Positions 1,258 to 6,557 of a stretch of 64,000 nucleotides of DNA are shown here, piece by piece. Numbering within the stretch: position 1 is the stretch's first letter; every line of letters starts with the position of its first letter. The translations under genes were made by a program, and so were the position numbers. This DNA is from Setoptus koraiensis (lineage: Eukaryota > Animalia > Arthropoda): the NCBI GenBank assembly GCA_048013815.1, contig CM106586.1, positions 3,286,001 to 3,350,000 on the forward strand, written 5' to 3'. The notes under the pieces were generated by a model. It saw only the letters and a program-made list of their open reading frames with translations, was not told the origin of the DNA and did not search any database.

Positions 1258-3474
1258 ATGTTCGAAATGCGATCATTCTTTTATGGGATCGTGATAACGT
1301 CCATTTTGTGGCTTCTGGCCCTATTTCTTATATTCCCAGTTGATTTTTGGACACGAACAAGCCACGAAGAATTTATTCACGATGGCACTAATCACAACAG
1401 AAGACTATCTAGGCGTCACCAGAAAGTGCAACATCATCGGAGTAACGCCGAATCTAGTCTAATTGAGTTCAGTTCAAAACATGAAATCTCGACCAGCATA
1501 GACAGCCTTCAGTCCGAGCTGATTCACATTGATTGGTTTTATCAATTCAATGTAAACGCGCCTAACACAACGGACAATCATCCTAAACTGGAACGTTTTA
1601 TATCTAAGGATGACCACGAAACCTCAACACAACGTTTGAGTATTATAAGGACCATATTAGACCAAAAGTTCAAATTGGCAGGATATAAGAGATTTGCATT
1701 TAATTTACTCATCTCAAATAGATTGGGTCTATTTCGTCCATTGCCTGATACTAGAAACGAACTATGTAAAAATGTTGAATATTTTGATGATCATTTATTA
1801 CCCACAGCATCTATTATCATATGCTATTACAATGAGGCACCTAGTGCCTTGATGCGAACCGTCTATACCATACTAGAACGGAGCCGTGGATTACCGTTGT
1901 TGGAGATAATTCTTGTCGATGACTTCAGTGATGACGAATTTACACGATACAACATGTCGGATTATGTCAAGTCTCCCCTTATAAGAATGTTGCGAACTCC
2001 CGAAAGAGCTGGACTAGTAAGAGCAAGATTGTTTGGTTCAAGGCAAGCCAAGGGCGAAATTTTAGTCTTTTTGGACAGTCATGTTGAACCAAACGAGGAC
2101 TGGTTGCGGCCGCTACTTCAAGAGGTGTCGAAAAATAATAACACTCTAGCCTGCCCCATAATAGATGTCATCAATCCTAACACCCTACAATACTCCTCAT
2201 CGCCCATGGTTAAAGGTGGCCTTAATTGGGGCCTACATTTTAAATGGGATTCTGTGACTAGAGACTTTTTAAAGACCAAGGCCGATTTTGTCAAACCAAT
2301 CCCATCACCAACTATGGCTGGTGGTTTATTCGCGGTGAATGCGCAATACTTCAAACATCTTGGCGAATACGATGAAGGAATGAATATATGGGGTGGTGAA
2401 AATATTGAATTGTCATTCCGAACATGGATGTGTGGTGGCCAAATAAAGATTCTACCCTGCAGTAAAGTGGGTCACATATTTAGACATCGCAGACCGTATG
2501 GATCATCTGAAGAAGAAGATACATTAGTCCACAACTCGCTGAGGGCTGCCCTAGTTTGGCTGGATGAATACAAGGGGAATTTTTATGATGCACATCCAGA
2601 ATCCAGAAATATGGATGCAGGAGATGTGATAGATCGAATCAATCTAAGGAAAAATTTGAATTGTAGAAACTTTACTTGGTATATCGATAATATCTATCCA
2701 TCGTTGAAACAAGAGAAATTGGCTGAGAAACTGACTGAGAAAAGACTAGATTCTAAGTGGCAGATGCTTCGAGATAAGTATGGTAATAAAACAAATCAAC
2801 GGAAAAATATGCAGAAATCAGGTTCTATGCGATATGATCTGAATAAGAAGTGGTCAAAGCAGAATGCTCTGTCTCGTGCGCTAGAATTCGACGAAAGAAC
2901 TCCCATTAGGTTGCCAAAAGTAGTTATGCGTTATCAGATACAATTATTTAATAGTAACTTATGTATTGAATCAAAGGATGGTGTTCTACACAAGGGGTCA
3001 CGCCTAATATTAAACTATTGTGCCAAAACTGACAATATACCAGGAAATCGTATAAATCAATTTGAAAATGTCGATAATTATCAAATTAGTAATCAATTGT
3101 GGTCTGAAACACAAAAGAAAGATCTTAGATTATCGGATATGTTATGTTTGGATGCAGTGAAAAACTTGCCTGTTTTGAGAAAGTGTCACAATGCTGGGGC
3201 GTATCAAGAATGGACTCACAGCAACGGAGTCAGAGGAGTTTCCATATACAATTCTGCCGGAGGACTTTGTTTGGGAGTTGAAAGAGCTCAAGCTGGAGAA
3301 CCATTACTGGTGACAATATGTGAGAATAACTATGACAATATTATAGATGGCAATTCCTGGCATTCCATGACATCTCAAAAATGGAACCTACTTATAGAAA
3401 ATCCCAACCATTCCAATCGTAATACGGCAGCTCCGAAACAGAAATACTCACATGAAATGTACAACACAATCTGA
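1258..3474 (+). CDS. GALNT11: Polypeptide N-acetylgalactosaminyltransferase, GALNT11/pgant35A-like, intronless
   Basis: N-terminal type II TM; GT-A motifs (FNLLISNRLG, VFLDSHVE DxH, GGLNWGLHFKWD, PTMAGGLFA, IWGGENIELSFR); C-terminal ricin-type lectin cysteines. First ATG is 1258; the track's 1216 start is TTG. Confidence 0.93.
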   Translation: MFEMRSFFYGIVITSILWLLALFLIFPVDFWTRTSHEEFIHDGTNHNRRLSRRHQKVQHHRSNAESSLIEFSSKHEISTSIDSLQSELIHIDWFYQFNVNAPNTTDNHPKLERFISKDDHETSTQRLSIIRTILDQKFKLAGYKRFAFNLLISNRLGLFRPLPDTRNELCKNVEYFDDHLLPTASIIICYYNEAPSALMRTVYTILERSRGLPLLEIILVDDFSDDEFTRYNMSDYVKSPLIRMLRTPERAGLVRARLFGSRQAKGEILVFLDSHVEPNEDWLRPLLQEVSKNNNTLACPIIDVINPNTLQYSSSPMVKGGLNWGLHFKWDSVTRDFLKTKADFVKPIPSPTMAGGLFAVNAQYFKHLGEYDEGMNIWGGENIELSFRTWMCGGQIKILPCSKVGHIFRHRRPYGSSEEEDTLVHNSLRAALVWLDEYKGNFYDAHPESRNMDAGDVIDRINLRKNLNCRNFTWYIDNIYPSLKQEKLAEKLTEKRLDSKWQMLRDKYGNKTNQRKNMQKSGSMRYDLNKKWSKQNALSRALEFDERTPIRLPKVVMRYQIQLFNSNLCIESKDGVLHKGSRLILNYCAKTDNIPGNRINQFENVDNYQISNQLWSETQKKDLRLSDMLCLDAVKNLPVLRKCHNAGAYQEWTHSNGVRGVSIYNSAGGLCLGVERAQAGEPLLVTICENNYDNIIDGNSWHSMTSQKWNLLIENPNHSNRNTAAPKQKYSHEMYNTI

Positions 3475-3624
3475 AAAGATAAAACCCCCCACTTGAGCTA
3501 TGCATGATTGAATACTCTGTCATTATATGAGCGTATGATTCAGCTTTTAGATATATTTATGATTTTATTGCATTTGATTGACCATGGATTGGTCGATAAC
3601 AGATCGCTATGGTGCTGTTGTTGG

Positions 3625-4230
3625 TTAGTATTTGTTTGAAGCTGGCTTCTCCTCTACGATGGATGCACAAACCCATCTATTCTTGTTTTCGGTTTTGTGG
3701 ATCACAATAGAGCGACCAATGATTGTGTTGGGTCCAGACAAAGACAATTTATCATCGGTAAAACTGCCAGCATAGTGTCCTGGATGGTTCTCTTTCGCCA
3801 ATGACAAAGGTCCGTGTTTTCCGCTGAGATCGCCCAATTCATAAGAATCAAATGGCGCAGATTTCGGTGGTAGAATGACGGTGATGTTGAATGGATTGAA
3901 ATGGCCTCCTGTCTCCTTGCACATTGTCTCGATTGCAGTTGCGTTTGTTTTTATTGACTCTAGATCAATGCCTGCTGGCAAAGGTTTCACATGAACATGA
4001 AAATATCTGTTGTTGTCTCGCAGGTTCTCAAGATTATATTCGCAAATGGTGGGATCGCTCTCACTTTTCTGAGTAAACTTCATATAGCCTGTTACACCAT
4101 CGAGGCCGTCAAATCTGGCAACTGCTTGACGCGGCGCCGGATTAGAGTCGAACATGAACCAGGCCTGGCAACATAAACCATAGATGCCGATGGCAACAAC
4201 TAAACTAGCCAAATGCGTCGAGAATTTCAT
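3625..4230 (-). CDS. Secreted single-domain superoxide dismutase of Cu-only type
   Basis: Signal peptide; FHVH, GGHFNP, ELGDLSGKHG, IIGRSIVIH, RWVCASI; Zn-ligand His residues and electrostatic loop absent. Confidence 0.88.
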   Translation of the reverse strand: MKFSTHLASLVVAIGIYGLCCQAWFMFDSNPAPRQAVARFDGLDGVTGYMKFTQKSESDPTICEYNLENLRDNNRYFHVHVKPLPAGIDLESIKTNATAIETMCKETGGHFNPFNITVILPPKSAPFDSYELGDLSGKHGPLSLAKENHPGHYAGSFTDDKLSLSGPNTIIGRSIVIHKTENKNRWVCASIVEEKPASNKY

Positions 4231-6557
4231 GCTGATGCTTTTTCTTGCTAGATAGTAGCTAAATGTTGTTACAAAGTATCAATTTAAATAGTTCACAGTG
4301 TTCACGATATGAATTCAACGAATGATTTGTCATTTATTTCACGATGATGTTACTTCTATGTCGAGCTGAATTGAACTGATCTCTGAGAGTCTTAATTGTT
4401 GTAATAAAGATTTGTCATTTTTGTCTGTTCAAGCACAAATATTTAGCTTTTTGTTGTTTCGTTAAGTTATGTCGATCCAATTCGAGTCGAATGATGACAT
4501 TAACAGCAACATCTAATTGACGAATGCAGGTTTTTGTTTAAGACCAGAGATAGGTATAGACATAGAGTCACCTTGAATTCTTCTTGAACTACTTGATTAT
4601 TTTTACACCATTCGTAGTCGCATACAAGTTGACTCAGGTAACATGTTGTTCATACTATTTATTATTAGAATTGAGTTGATGCTTATTTGTTCACCATCAT
4701 GGCCGTCATTCAAGAATTACTCAGTATACTGTTTCATGTCATGCAAACTTATTGAATTGGGCTCACTCAGCAGTCATGGTTCAGATTGAGAAAGCGTCTC
4801 TGTCGCTTCAATCAAGTTAGTAAGATTAACAGACAAACAGATAAATGAGCAAGTGGATTCTTTTACCATCATCTCACCTCATTATAATGATCACCCAAAT
4901 CACGATTGCAACAGTCTTGATTATGTCATGAATCATGACTTATTTAGAATCAAATCAACTACTTTATTGTTGATGCATGCTGCACCTCTAATGCATTAAG
5001 CTATAATTTTCTGAATTCAATCTTCATTTGCTGAAAGTGGCGCTAACTATTAATTGGCCGACAGTCGTCAACAAAGAATTCACCATCACTTTTCGAGTTA
5101 TCTAAACAGCTTTCGGTGTACGTAAAAAATAAGCTGAGATTCGGTCATTGGGTCACGGCAGCTTGTTTCAGTGGTATAGTTGAAAAGTCGGTGCATTTGA
5201 TCTTATAACTAAGTGCTCTTCTCTAATTGATATCAGATACTCAGTCGATAGACATGACCAGTATATCTAAATCATGAATGGACGGTTGGTTGATGATGGG
5301 ATTAAAAAAACGCTAGCAAAAGAATCAATATTAACGAAATAGCAACCAAAATAGATCACAGGAGTTGTCCAACTAATTTGAAATCGAAATTTTATATGTC
5401 AATGAACATAGATAATTGAAATACTTGGTCGTCCCATTCGATTGATTCCAAGAAAAAGAAGCATCTAACTGTGAGGTGATAGAGGATTCGGCAGGCAAAT
5501 AACTCATTCTTATCTGTTGGCGCCAAGTAATTAAATCAGTGCGAGATGAAGCGTGAGCATGTGAAACAGTGTACCCGTCCTGCCGTCTCTTCGGATCTGC
5601 CACTGTGTCCGTGGATTGTCACATCAGGAACAATGTCAGCTTGTGTGATGGTGGAAAATTCTTACAAGCTGTAAGTTATATTAACGTAAAAAGTAGTTGC
5701 GGCAGCTGGACACTTGATCATTAGATAGTCGGACAAACAAGGAAAAAAATTATGGGCAAAAAAAGTACACTCAGATCGTCTAATGTGCTGGATCATATTT
5801 TTACTTGTTTATTTTCTACGGACTACGTTCGTTATTCTAGCAGAATTGTATATTTCTATGACAGTAACCAAACAATTACGCAGCAAAGAATGGTACACAC
5901 AGATTATGGTTACGATTGAAACTGGAGTACCTAGCGGAGTTTGCGCACTATCGCCGAGCTCGTAGTTGTTCGAAGGCTTACACAGTTTGAGGTATTCTGG
6001 GGATTCTGTGCTGGTGTCTGAGCTGATGGGGTACGTGCTTGGAACGGCACAATAGTGTTAAATAGTGGCGTTCCTCACATAAACAAACAGCAAAAGCAGC
6101 AGTAGAAGATTCAAAATGATAGTCTCCATCGGTGGGGAAGTTGCACGTATTACTACGTGCAACCACTGCAATTTACTATGGTCATAGTATACGCGCGTGC
6201 ACTTTGGTGAAGTCTGAGTGAAGTGTACTGCTGGCTTGGAGCAAGTATCAATTATTATATTATTACGCAAGAGAAAAGGGTGCAAACAAGATAAACACAC
6301 ACGCACATCAGGCGCTTGATCGGGGCCAAATACTACAGCGGTTACTATCTATACATTATCTCATCCTTAGGCAAGCACCCCCACGTACAAGTCAATACTG
6401 TTTATCTATATTTATAAATATAAACGATATATATTTATTTATATGTATATATATACATATATATTGAATTCAAACACAACTAATAGTGGAATTGTTTGTG
6501 TGTACATACACACATGTAGTTTTTTCATCTGATTAGCGTAGAGAAAATAATACTAAA

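What the first reader, a model, noticed from the sequence alone, without database searches (positions are those of the whole stretch)
3625..4230. Stand-alone Cu-only superoxide dismutase in an animal
Seen: all four Cu-ligand His positions are kept (FHVH, GGHFNP, IVIH). The Zn-ligand positions equivalent to SOD1 His71 and His80 are lost (the latter is Glu in YELGDLSGKHG), and the electrostatic loop is deleted (H-KTENKN-RWVCASI). A signal peptide directly precedes one domain, which is followed by a stop. Established: this pattern defines Cu-only SODs such as Candida albicans SOD5. Single-domain forms are described from fungi and oomycetes, whereas animals are described as carrying the domain in multi-repeat CSRP/RSOD proteins. 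Inference: either a CSRP reduced to one repeat in a streamlined genome or a horizontal acquisition; possibly secreted to counter host oxidative bursts.
Basis: partly seen in the sequence, partly recalled or inferred. Interest (0 to 1): 0.7.

Follow-up and report, generated by a model that had tools for sequence, protein, structure and literature searches.

The report
Single-repeat copper-only SOD in mites
This plant-feeding mite carries an intact, conserved gene for a small secreted copper-only superoxide dismutase with a single domain; animals were thought to have this domain only in chains of 4-12 repeats, and it most likely arose from one such repeat.

Summary
Window 3625-4230 (minus strand) is an intronless 201-aa ORF. 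It has a signal peptide and one Sod_Cu domain (Pfam E 1.8e-15). All four Cu-ligand His, the disulfide Cys pair, the catalytic Arg and the SOD5-type Glu/Asp pair (E131/D134) are present. Zn ligands H71 and H80 are lost and the electrostatic loop is deleted.

It is not an exon of a repeat protein. The 64 kb holds no other SOD domain, and a convergent GalNAc-transferase gene ends 150 bp downstream. A 77%-identical orthologue has the same length and neighbours, with dN/dS 0.22. At least 37 single-domain homologues of about 200 aa exist. One is named, from the eriophyoid mite Aceria tosichella, and others lie on arthropod contigs.

The family profile scores 105-162 bits on repeat 3 of animal CSRPs, against 62 for Candida SOD5 and a median of 34 for fungal proteins. 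Trees place the family with CSRP repeats 3 and 5 (support 99-100), and two signature residues are shared. AU tests are only borderline (p 0.05-0.4).

Horizontal transfer from fungi is disfavoured. I found no paper describing this family. I rate it a new variant of a known kind, of moderate interest.

The parts
3625..4230 (-). Complete intronless CDS of the single-domain Cu-only-type SOD (201 codons plus TAA stop)
   Evidence: ORF list. Pfam Sod_Cu at E 1.8e-15. A 77% orthologue of identical length lies on L001. dN/dS is 0.22.
4162..4230 (-). Predicted signal peptide, residues 1-23 (n-region MKFSTH, hydrophobic core, CQA|W). The family consensus is ADA|WW.
   Evidence: Read from the sequence and alignment A1. 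A23, W24 and W25 are nearly invariant. No signal-peptide predictor was available, so this is an inference.
3649..4131 (-). Sod_Cu beta-barrel domain, residues 34-194
   Evidence: Pfam. AF2 model with pLDDT 79.6 and 8 strands. Foldseek hits SOD1 and SOD5 at E about 1e-6.
3991..3999 (-). Codons H78-V79-H80, two Cu ligands (SOD1 H46/H48)
   Evidence: invariant; mite 12/12 His.
3901..3903 (-). Codon H110, equivalent to the bridging His of SOD1 (H63)
3697..3699 (-). Codon H178, fourth Cu ligand (SOD1 H120)
3829..3840 (-). Codons E131-L-G-D134. This is the SOD5 E110/D113 signature that replaces the Zn site. Y130 just upstream is shared with CSRP repeats 3 and 5.
   Evidence: Alignment to SOD5. Review definition in PMC13017621. 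Column counts.
3919..3921 (-). Codon C104, first Cys of the conserved disulfide (SOD1 C57)
   Evidence: invariant.
3667..3678 (-). Codons R185-W186-V187-C188. These are the catalytic Arg (SOD1 R143), a Trp shared with CSRP repeats 3 and 5, and the second disulfide Cys (SOD1 C146). The shortened loop VII lies just upstream, at residues 179-184.
3934..3981 (-). Family-specific insert of about 10 residues after the PLP motif (about residues 84-99), carrying the conserved N-glycosylation sequon N95-A-T. It is absent from CSRP repeats, fungal proteins and P0187.
   Evidence: Alignments.
3564..3569 (-). AATAAA on the minus strand, 56-61 nt after the stop: candidate polyadenylation signal
   Evidence: Read. 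This is a consensus match only.
4283..4290 (-). TATTTAAA on the minus strand, about 55 nt upstream of the ATG: candidate TATA box
   Evidence: Read. This is a consensus match only.
1267..3474 (+). Convergent neighbour, a polypeptide GalNAc-transferase (GT2 plus ricin lectin). It ends 150 bp from the SOD stop, leaving no room for further repeats.
   Evidence: Pfam. The orthologue on L001 is 89% identical, in the same arrangement.

Best explanation
The ORF is a functional, single-exon gene of an eriophyoid-type mite. It encodes a secreted, soluble, monomeric-type Cu-only superoxide dismutase.

Proposed mechanism, inferred from the SOD5 and CSRP literature:
- The protein enters the secretory pathway through its signal peptide and is N-glycosylated at the conserved NAT sequon.
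- It folds as an eight-stranded SOD barrel held by the C104-C188 disulfide.
- It binds one Cu through H78, H80, H110 and H178 in an open site, because loop VII is cut to about 6 residues.
- E131 and D134 take over the organising role of the lost Zn site, and R185 steers superoxide.
- It therefore dismutates extracellular superoxide without Zn.

In evolutionary terms it is not a fungal-type gene. It belongs to a conserved mite family that descends from one Cu-binding odd-numbered repeat (repeat 3/5 type) of the animal multi-repeat CSRP, set free as a stand-alone gene with its own signal peptide.

Shown here: gene integrity, conservation, purifying selection, the residue pattern, single-domain architecture and affinity to CSRP repeats 3 and 5.

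Inferred only: secretion, Cu binding, activity and the site of action (mite body fluids or gut versus saliva and the plant interface).
For: Gene and architecture:
- Complete ORF with Pfam Sod_Cu at 1.8e-15, truncated at profile position 113/133.
- No second SOD domain in 64 kb.
- The convergent GalNAc-T gene ends 150 bp downstream.
- The orthologue P0001 is 77% identical, also 201 aa, with the same neighbours. dN/dS is 0.22.

Family:
- There are 33 word-search homologues of 184-238 aa, all starting with Met plus a signal peptide. Three more distant single-domain representatives bring the set to 37.
- One homologue is named Aceria tosichella A0A6G1SI58.
- Other contigs carry Spaetzle, trypsin or CBM_14 genes.
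- Invariant residues are H78, H80, H110, H178, C104, C188, E131, D134 and R185.

Animal context:
- The window also encodes a TRIM-NHL protein, C2-domain and trypsin proteins and a kinase, and its base composition matches at this position.

SOD5 likeness:
- The family profile aligns end to end with Candida SOD5 (62 bits). The match includes HVH-KPVP, E-x-GDL-GKHG and the short loop before the C-terminal Cys. SOD1 matches are fragmentary.
- The fold is confirmed.

CSRP origin:
- Per-domain scores of the mite profile are 105-162 bits on repeat 3 of six-repeat CSRPs. The best is the second complete SOD domain of the arthropod CSRP fragment P0099, which pairs with repeat 3 of the millipede CSRP.
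- The same profile scores at most 94 and a median of 34 bits on 119 fungal-type proteins.
- The split {mite + R3 + R5} has support 99/91 (84 rows), 100/98 (57 rows) and SH-aLRT 99 with 17 named fungi.
- Y130 and W186 are shared with R3 and R5 (8 of 9 each). Fungi have Cys (16/17) and Ile/Leu at these positions.
- Identity of the window domain is 44% to the second complete SOD domain of P0099 (repeat-3 type), 41% to R3 and 33% to fungi.
Against: - There is no expression evidence for this gene.
- Secretion, metal content and activity are untested.
- AU tests do not formally reject the alternative placements. Mite plus outgroup set held together gives p 0.175 and 0.418 under the mixture model. 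All CSRP repeats held together without the mite family gives p 0.129. Mite plus named fungi gives p 0.0505 under LG+F+G4.
- The alignment has only about 150 columns.
- The family is sister to R3+R5 rather than clearly nested in the arthropod repeat 3. A descent from the mite's own CSRP is therefore not shown.
- I could not search the rest of this genome for a surviving multi-repeat CSRP.
- The Zn-loop remnant (residues 123-136) is modelled with pLDDT below 50.
- Many family members, though not this one, carry His-His shortly after the bridging His. Their role is unknown.
Confidence: 0.7

Rival explanations
1. Horizontal transfer: the gene was acquired by an eriophyoid ancestor from a fungus or oomycete that has single-domain Cu-only SODs.
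For: It has the same architecture as fungal enzymes: a signal peptide plus one domain of about 200 aa. The language-model feature search lists Basidiomycota, Ascomycota and Oomycota clusters first. AU tests do not reject mite plus fungal at 5%.
Against: - The mite profile scores at most 94 and a median of 34 bits on fungal-type proteins, against 105-162 on CSRP repeat 3.
- The trees put 17 named fungi on the far side of a 99-100% branch.
- The forced mite-plus-fungi branch has zero length and costs 41.8 lnL.
- Fungi have Cys and Ile/Leu where the mite family, R3 and R5 have Tyr and Trp.
- The gene sits in ordinary mite sequence with conserved synteny.
Confidence: 0.05
2. Ancient retention: the family is a surviving single-domain opisthokont Cu-only SOD that was never part of a repeat protein. 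It is sister to the lineage that gave repeats 3 and 5.
For: In three trees the family is sister to all R3+R5 rather than nested in one of them. Holding all CSRP repeats together without the mite family is not rejected (p 0.129).
Against: - It would require a gene older than the sponge-bilaterian split to survive in these mites alone. Only 6 of the best 150 representatives are single-domain members of this family, and the rest are multi-repeat proteins or pieces of them.
- Odd and even repeats are separated by strong branches, which implies the R3/R5 type arose inside a repeat protein.
- The LG tree and the 57-row tree nest the family weakly inside R3, next to the arthropod repeat.
- The family stem is long (0.36-0.61), which fits a basal pull by fast evolution.
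Confidence: 0.1
3. Convergence: a canonical extracellular Cu/Zn SOD of arthropods lost its Zn ligands and electrostatic loop independently.
For: A phmmer search with the single protein ranks yeast SOD1 slightly above SOD5. Foldseek does not separate SOD1 from SOD5.
Against: - The family profile gives canonical SOD1s 38-58 bits with broken alignments (Bombyx SOD1 39, human about 40), against 62 for SOD5 and 105-162 for CSRP repeats.
- The shared motifs HVH-x-PVP, Y-E-x-GDLSGK and RW-x-C are CSRP-type.
Confidence: 0.03
4. Non-enzymatic use: the protein keeps the Cu site but works as an extracellular copper binder or buffer, or as a recognition protein, not as a superoxide scavenger. This rival concerns function and is compatible with any origin.
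For: The review (PMC13017621) describes SOD-fold proteins with other roles, such as oyster dominin and Cu-less CSRPs. Cu-only SODs bind Cu weakly. The conserved family-specific insert and the invariant AWW N-terminus have no known catalytic role.
Against: Every residue needed for catalysis is invariant across 34 sequences of 46-77% identity. This includes the second-sphere E131/D134 pair and R185, which matter for turnover rather than for mere binding.
Confidence: 0.12
5. Annotation artefact: the ORF is one exon of a larger multi-repeat CSRP gene.
For: Arthropod CSRP genes are split into exons that roughly follow repeats (L009: ORFs of 611, 184 and 148 aa).
Against: - The ORF has its own Met and signal peptide and its own stop.
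- The same 201-aa frame is kept in the orthologue, and about 200-aa frames in 37 relatives.
- No other SOD-like stretch exists in 64 kb.
- An opposing gene lies 150 bp beyond the stop.
Confidence: 0.02

Closest known systems
[quoted passage not shown]
   Same: These are its nearest relatives by profile score, tree and identity (41-44%). Shared features are the barrel, the disulfide, four Cu His, the E/D signature, loss of the Zn His, the short loop VII, the Tyr before the Glu, and the Arg-Trp-x-Cys C-terminal motif. Both are extracellular by signal peptide.
   Different: It has one domain instead of 4-12 tandem repeats, at about 20 kDa instead of 100 kDa or more. It has no Cu-less N-terminal repeats and no GPI signal. 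It carries a family-specific insert of about 10 residues with an N-glycosylation sequon, a conserved AWW at the predicted mature N-terminus, and His instead of Phe/Tyr in GK(H)G.
Fungal and oomycete Cu-only SODs (Candida albicans SOD5, PDB 4N3T; Metarhizium 'cell surface Cu-only SOD')
   Same: Shared features are the single-domain secreted architecture, size, Cu ligands, E110/D113 equivalents, the GDL-GKHG motif, HVH-KPVP, the deleted electrostatic loop and the open site. The expected chemistry is therefore the same.
   Different: It is a different lineage, with 33% median identity and a position on the other side of a strongly supported branch. It has no GPI anchor. Most of the fungal proteins sampled have an extra Cys before the Glu (16/17) and Ile/Leu where the mite family has Trp.
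Canonical Cu/Zn SOD1 and SOD3
   Same: Shared features are the fold, the Cu ligands, the disulfide and the catalytic Arg.
   Different: It lacks two of the four Zn ligands and the 16-residue electrostatic loop. Canonical enzymes score only 38-58 bits, with broken alignments, against the family profile.

Membership tests
Cu-only SOD (SOD5 type), as defined in PMC13017621 | [quoted passage not shown] | tested here: met
   Pfam Sod_Cu at 1.8e-15. AF2 model with pLDDT 79.6 and eight strands. Foldseek matches to SOD1 and SOD5 at probability 1.00.
Cu-only SOD (SOD5 type), as defined in PMC13017621 | Intact Cu site (four His) | tested here: met
   H78, H80, H110 and H178 align to SOD1 H46, H48, H63 and H120. 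They are invariant in 34 sequences. Metal binding itself was not tested.
Cu-only SOD (SOD5 type), as defined in PMC13017621 | Conserved intramolecular disulfide | tested here: met
   C104 and C188 align to SOD1 C57 and C146 and are invariant.
Cu-only SOD (SOD5 type), as defined in PMC13017621 | No functional Zn site | tested here: met
   The SOD1 H71 position is Val/Ile and H80 is replaced by E131. Only the bridging His and the Asp remain.
Cu-only SOD (SOD5 type), as defined in PMC13017621 | Electrostatic loop (loop VII) truncated, giving an open active site | tested here: met
   The Pfam match stops at 113/133. H178 to C188 spans 10 residues, against 26 in SOD1 and 9 in SOD5. Openness of the site is inferred.
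Cu-only SOD (SOD5 type), as defined in PMC13017621 | E110/D113 signature | tested here: met
   E131-x-x-D134 aligns with SOD5 E110/D113 and is invariant in the family.
Cu-only SOD (SOD5 type), as defined in PMC13017621 | Extracellular location | tested here: inconclusive
   An N-terminal hydrophobic signal-like segment and AxA-type site are conserved, as is a conserved N-glycosylation sequon. No predictor or experiment was available.
Cu-only SOD (SOD5 type), as defined in PMC13017621 | Cu-dependent, Zn-independent SOD activity | not testable with these tools
   This needs recombinant protein, metal analysis and an activity assay.
CSRP (Cu-only SOD repeat protein) | [quoted passage not shown] | tested here: not met
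   It has a single domain and 201 aa. There is no further SOD-like sequence in 64 kb, and an opposing gene lies 150 bp after the stop. All 37 relatives are also single-domain.
CSRP (Cu-only SOD repeat protein) | Descent from the animal repeat lineage | tested here: met
   It groups with repeats 3 and 5 at 99/91, 100/98 and SH-aLRT 99. Y130 and W186 are shared. Per-domain scores are highest on repeat 3. AU tests are only borderline.

The most novel reading that the evidence does not exclude
A lineage of minute plant-parasitic mites freed a single Cu-binding repeat of the animal CSRP and turned it into a secreted stand-alone Cu-only SOD. That is the same solution pathogenic fungi use against host oxidative bursts. 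In this reading the mite delivers it at the feeding site, in saliva, to blunt the plant's apoplastic superoxide. It would be an animal effector convergent in architecture and use with fungal SOD5. It would also be a natural 'minimal CSRP', showing that one repeat is a competent enzyme.
Probability: 0.2. Interest if true: 0.7.

Novelty: new variant of a known kind. Interest (0 to 1): 0.45.

Why it matters
The current review of the field (Peterson and Culotta 2026, PMC13017621) makes three statements that this family qualifies:
- Open-site Cu-only SODs of about 25 kDa occur only in fungi and oomycetes.
- Animals carry the domain only as 4-12 tandem repeats.
- The arthropod CSRPs examined lack Cu sites.

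A conserved family of single-domain proteins with intact Cu sites in mites is a clear exception. It gives a natural experiment on why animals keep the domain in arrays. It also offers a small animal Cu-only SOD that should be easy to express for biochemistry.

Eriophyoid mites are crop pests that provoke reactive-oxygen defences in plants, so a secreted SOD is a reasonable effector candidate to test. The practical consequence is modest: one more branch on a known enzyme family, with an open question about where it acts.

Tried and rejected
There is no read-level support for the transcript, its ends or the tissue.

2. Foldseek against the PDB and the Atlas shape search confirm the fold but cannot separate SOD1, SOD5 and CSRP.

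3. My first 'fungal' outgroup (the P0037 group and P0198-P0205) turned out not to be named fungi. The P0199-P0205 consensus runs on into a second SOD-like repeat. I relabelled these sequences as unknown and repeated the tree with 17 named fungi.

4. E. coli SodC as root attaches among the degenerate repeat-1 sequences, which is long-branch behaviour. I therefore rely on unrooted splits, not on the root.

5. AU tests have little power. The constrained searches simply re-hang the long fungal branch onto the mite clade, while the mite family stays next to repeats 3 and 5. They do not contradict the free tree, but they do not clinch it either.

6. Synteny beyond the closest relative does not hold. 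The trypsin genes near the SOD in the window and on L002 are not orthologous.

7. Literature searches for Cu-only SODs in mites, SODs of eriophyoids or Aculops, and the Aceria transcriptome found nothing on this family.

8. The scan's own notes hold nothing on this gene.

9. One search was an aborted script with no output. Searches failed on a thread setting and on time, and were redone.

10. I could not search the rest of this genome or other eriophyoid genomes for a surviving multi-repeat CSRP or for paralogues. No canonical eukaryotic Cu/Zn SOD sequences were available to add to the trees.

Full report
**What is there**

The minus strand of window 3625-4230 holds one open reading frame of 201 codons that begins with ATG and ends with TAA. 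Pfam assigns it to Sod_Cu (E 1.8e-15, residues 46-183). The match stops at profile position 113 of 133, which is where the electrostatic loop of Cu/Zn SODs begins.

Aligned to yeast SOD1 and to Candida SOD5, the protein keeps these features:
- Four copper ligands: H78, H80, H110 and H178.
- The disulfide pair C104 and C188.
- The catalytic arginine R185, three residues before the second Cys as in SOD1.

The Zn site is gone. The SOD1 H71 position is aliphatic and H80 is replaced by E131. E131 and D134 reproduce the E110/D113 pair that defines Cu-only SODs (review PMC13017621). Ten residues separate H178 from C188, against 26 in SOD1 and 9 in SOD5.

The N-terminus looks like a signal peptide and the C-terminus has no hydrophobic tail. 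An AlphaFold2 model built on the family alignment is a SOD barrel (pLDDT 79.6) and matches SOD1 and SOD5 structures equally well.

**It is a complete gene, not an exon of a repeat protein**

- tblastn of the ORF against all 64 kb finds only the ORF itself.
- A polypeptide GalNAc-transferase gene on the opposite strand ends 150 bp beyond the stop codon.
- An AATAAA lies 56 nt after the stop and a TATTTAAA about 55 nt before the ATG. These are consensus matches only.
- The closest relative, P0001 (77% identity, also 201 aa), lies on a 6.4-kb contig with the same convergent GalNAc-transferase and the next gene beyond it.
- The transferases are 89% identical. The SOD genes give dN/dS 0.22, which indicates purifying selection on a somewhat faster-evolving protein.

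**It belongs to a conserved mite family**

The word-index search returned 33 single-domain proteins of 184-238 aa at 43-77% identity. All start with Met plus a signal-like segment. The exhaustive profile search added three more distant single-domain representatives.

One homologue is named: Aceria tosichella, an eriophyoid mite (UniRef A0A6G1SI58). Other members lie on contigs with Spaetzle, trypsin or chitin-binding CBM_14 genes.

The window itself is ordinary animal DNA. It encodes a TRIM-NHL protein, C2-domain and trypsin proteins and a kinase, and GC is 39-40% around the gene. Earlier notes of this scan call the genome a mite's.

Across the 34 aligned sequences the invariant residues are the Cu ligands, both Cys, E131, D134, R185 and the GKHG motif. 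An AWW motif at the predicted cleavage site and an N-A-T sequon inside an insert of about 10 residues are nearly invariant and specific to the family.

**Where it came from**

The profile search of 1.84 billion representatives found 1524 relatives. Apart from the mite family, nearly all of the best 150 are proteins of 600-2000 aa with 3-12 matched stretches, that is, CSRPs.

Scored domain by domain, the mite profile gives 105-134 bits on repeat 3 of six-repeat CSRPs. Examples of the per-repeat pattern:

| Protein | Organism | Scores by repeat or matched stretch (bits) |
|---|---|---|
| P0052 | chiton | 15, 16, 134, 63, 97, 25 |
| P0056 | hemichordate | 19, 15, 16, 132, 47, 85, 20 |

The best score, 162 bits, is on the second complete SOD domain of the arthropod CSRP fragment P0099. 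That contig also carries a group-7 mite-allergen gene, and its repeats pair with repeats 2, 3 and 4 of a millipede CSRP, so this domain is of the repeat-3 type.

The same profile gives much lower scores elsewhere:
- 62 bits on Candida SOD5 and 58 on yeast SOD1.
- At most 94 and a median of 34 bits on 119 fungal-type proteins.

Maximum-likelihood trees of single domains agree with the scores:
- The mite family is monophyletic (100/99).
- The split uniting it with CSRP repeats 3 and 5, against repeats 1, 2, 4 and 6, fungi and the outgroup, has support 99/91 with 84 rows and 100/98 with 57 rows.
- With 17 named Zoopagomycota and Ascomycota proteins added, that split has SH-aLRT 99.

Two alignment columns behave as signatures:

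| Position (window numbering) | Mite family | Repeat 3 | Repeat 5 | Fungi |
|---|---|---|---|---|
| 130, residue before the Glu | Tyr 10/12, Phe 2/12 | Tyr 8/9 | Tyr 8/9 | Cys 16/17 |
| 186, after the catalytic Arg | Trp 12/12 | Trp 8/9 | Trp 8/9 | Ile, Leu, Val or Tyr in all 17 (Ile 12, Leu 3) |

Identity of the window's domain is 44% to the second complete SOD domain of P0099 (repeat-3 type), 41% (median) to repeat 3 and 33% to fungi.

**Limits of the phylogeny**

With about 150 columns the topology tests are weak.

| Constraint | Model or data set | Cost (lnL) | p-AU |
|---|---|---|---|
| Mite family plus first outgroup set held together | mixture model, 84 rows | 18.6 | 0.175 |
| Mite family plus first outgroup set held together | mixture model, 57 rows | 5.0 | 0.418 |
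| All CSRP repeats held together without the mite family | mixture model | 25.9 | 0.129 |
| Mite family plus named fungi held together | LG+F+G4 | 41.8 | 0.0505 |

In the last test the forced branch has zero length. Inspection shows that the constrained trees keep the mite family next to repeats 3 and 5 and merely move the long fungal branch.

The family is usually sister to repeats 3+5 as a whole. It nests only weakly inside repeat 3, next to the arthropod sequence. Its stem branch is long, so a basal pull is plausible, but descent from the mite's own repeat 3 is not demonstrated.

I could not search the rest of the genome. Whether a multi-repeat CSRP survives beside this gene (a spin-off) or not (a reduction) stays open. 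The review's Table S1 lists multi-repeat CSRP/Rsod genes in Dermatophagoides and Varroa, so mites ancestrally had one.

**How it most likely works**

By analogy with SOD5 and Cu-binding CSRPs (PMC13017621, PMC12217663), the steps would be:
1. The protein is exported.
2. It is glycosylated and oxidised to form the disulfide.
3. It is loaded with one Cu in an open site.
4. E131 and D134 replace the structural role of Zn, and R185 guides the anion, giving Zn-independent dismutation of extracellular superoxide.

All of this is inference from invariant residues. Where it acts is unknown. A salivary role against the plant oxidative burst is attractive for a plant-parasitic mite, but nothing here tests it. 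An internal extracellular role in gut lumen, haemolymph or cuticle is at least as likely.

**Comparison with what is known, and novelty**

The 2026 review states that open-site Cu-only SODs of about 25 kDa are found only in fungi and oomycetes. It also states that animals have 4-12-repeat CSRPs and that the arthropod CSRPs examined lack Cu sites. Tan et al. [quoted passage not shown]

No paper I could find mentions Cu-only SODs in mites. The Aceria protein exists in UniProt under the generic name 'Superoxide dismutase'.

The family meets every sequence-level criterion of a Cu-only SOD. It fails the defining criterion of a CSRP, tandem repeats, although it descends from that lineage. I class it as a new variant of a known kind: a single-repeat animal Cu-only SOD. 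Interest is moderate. It contradicts a textbook-style generalisation and offers a tractable minimal enzyme and an effector candidate, but the chemistry and fold are known.

- No sequence in this work looked human.
- No reads tool was used, because the first was closed.
- The costly representative search was used once, because the claim depended on who the nearest relatives are.

Noticed in passing
L009:10001-13034 (also L010): This is an arthropod multi-repeat CSRP gene next to a group-7 mite-allergen-family gene. Its repeat-3-like and repeat-4-like domains both keep all four Cu His, the disulfide and E/D. The millipede Chamberlinius CSRP (P0069) likewise has intact Cu sites in repeats 3 and 5. 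The review's remark that arthropod CSRPs lack Cu sites (based on Bombyx and a tardigrade) therefore does not hold for all arthropods.
   Followed up: partly
L004:5086-8507: Two single-domain Sod_Cu genes (166 and 168 aa, four Cys each) lie in tandem near a tyrosinase gene on a metagenome contig of an unidentified eukaryote. In the trees this group sits with the even-numbered CSRP repeats (4 and 6), not with named fungi.
   Followed up: partly
Proteins P0199-P0205: These called proteins of 213-246 aa come from large ENA eukaryotic contigs. They continue after the first SOD domain into what looks like the start of a second one. They are probably first pieces of repeat proteins, not single-domain enzymes.
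   Followed up: no
Protein P0265: A 184-aa 'Photinus pyralis' (firefly) UniRef entry sits among Metarhizium-like fungal Cu-only SODs. It is likely fungal contamination of an insect transcriptome. This is a caution for database claims of single-domain Cu-only SODs in animals or plants. Whether the 'monocot' entries of Tan et al. 2025 are eriophyoid or fungal contaminants is my speculation only.
   Followed up: no
window:20000-40000: GC content rises from about 39-40% to 50-56% over about 20 kb and falls again. The scan's own note s1-307618 links this to a GGGCCC-rich calbindin locus. I did not examine it.
   Followed up: no
window:238-1068 and L001:5314-6111: A 276-aa ORF with no Pfam match is conserved in position (265 aa) beyond the GalNAc-transferase in the related mite. 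It is an unnamed conserved gene.
   Followed up: no
same genome, about 18.2 Mb beyond this window (note s1-330319): The scan lists a 'secreted mucin-stalk protein ending in a metal-free Cu/Zn-SOD fold'. It could be a remnant or relative of the CSRP lineage in this genome.
   Followed up: no
Alignment A1, columns after the bridging His: Most family members, though not this window's protein, have His-His four and five residues after the bridging His (NPHH). The meaning is unknown. It could be an auxiliary metal-capture site.
   Followed up: no
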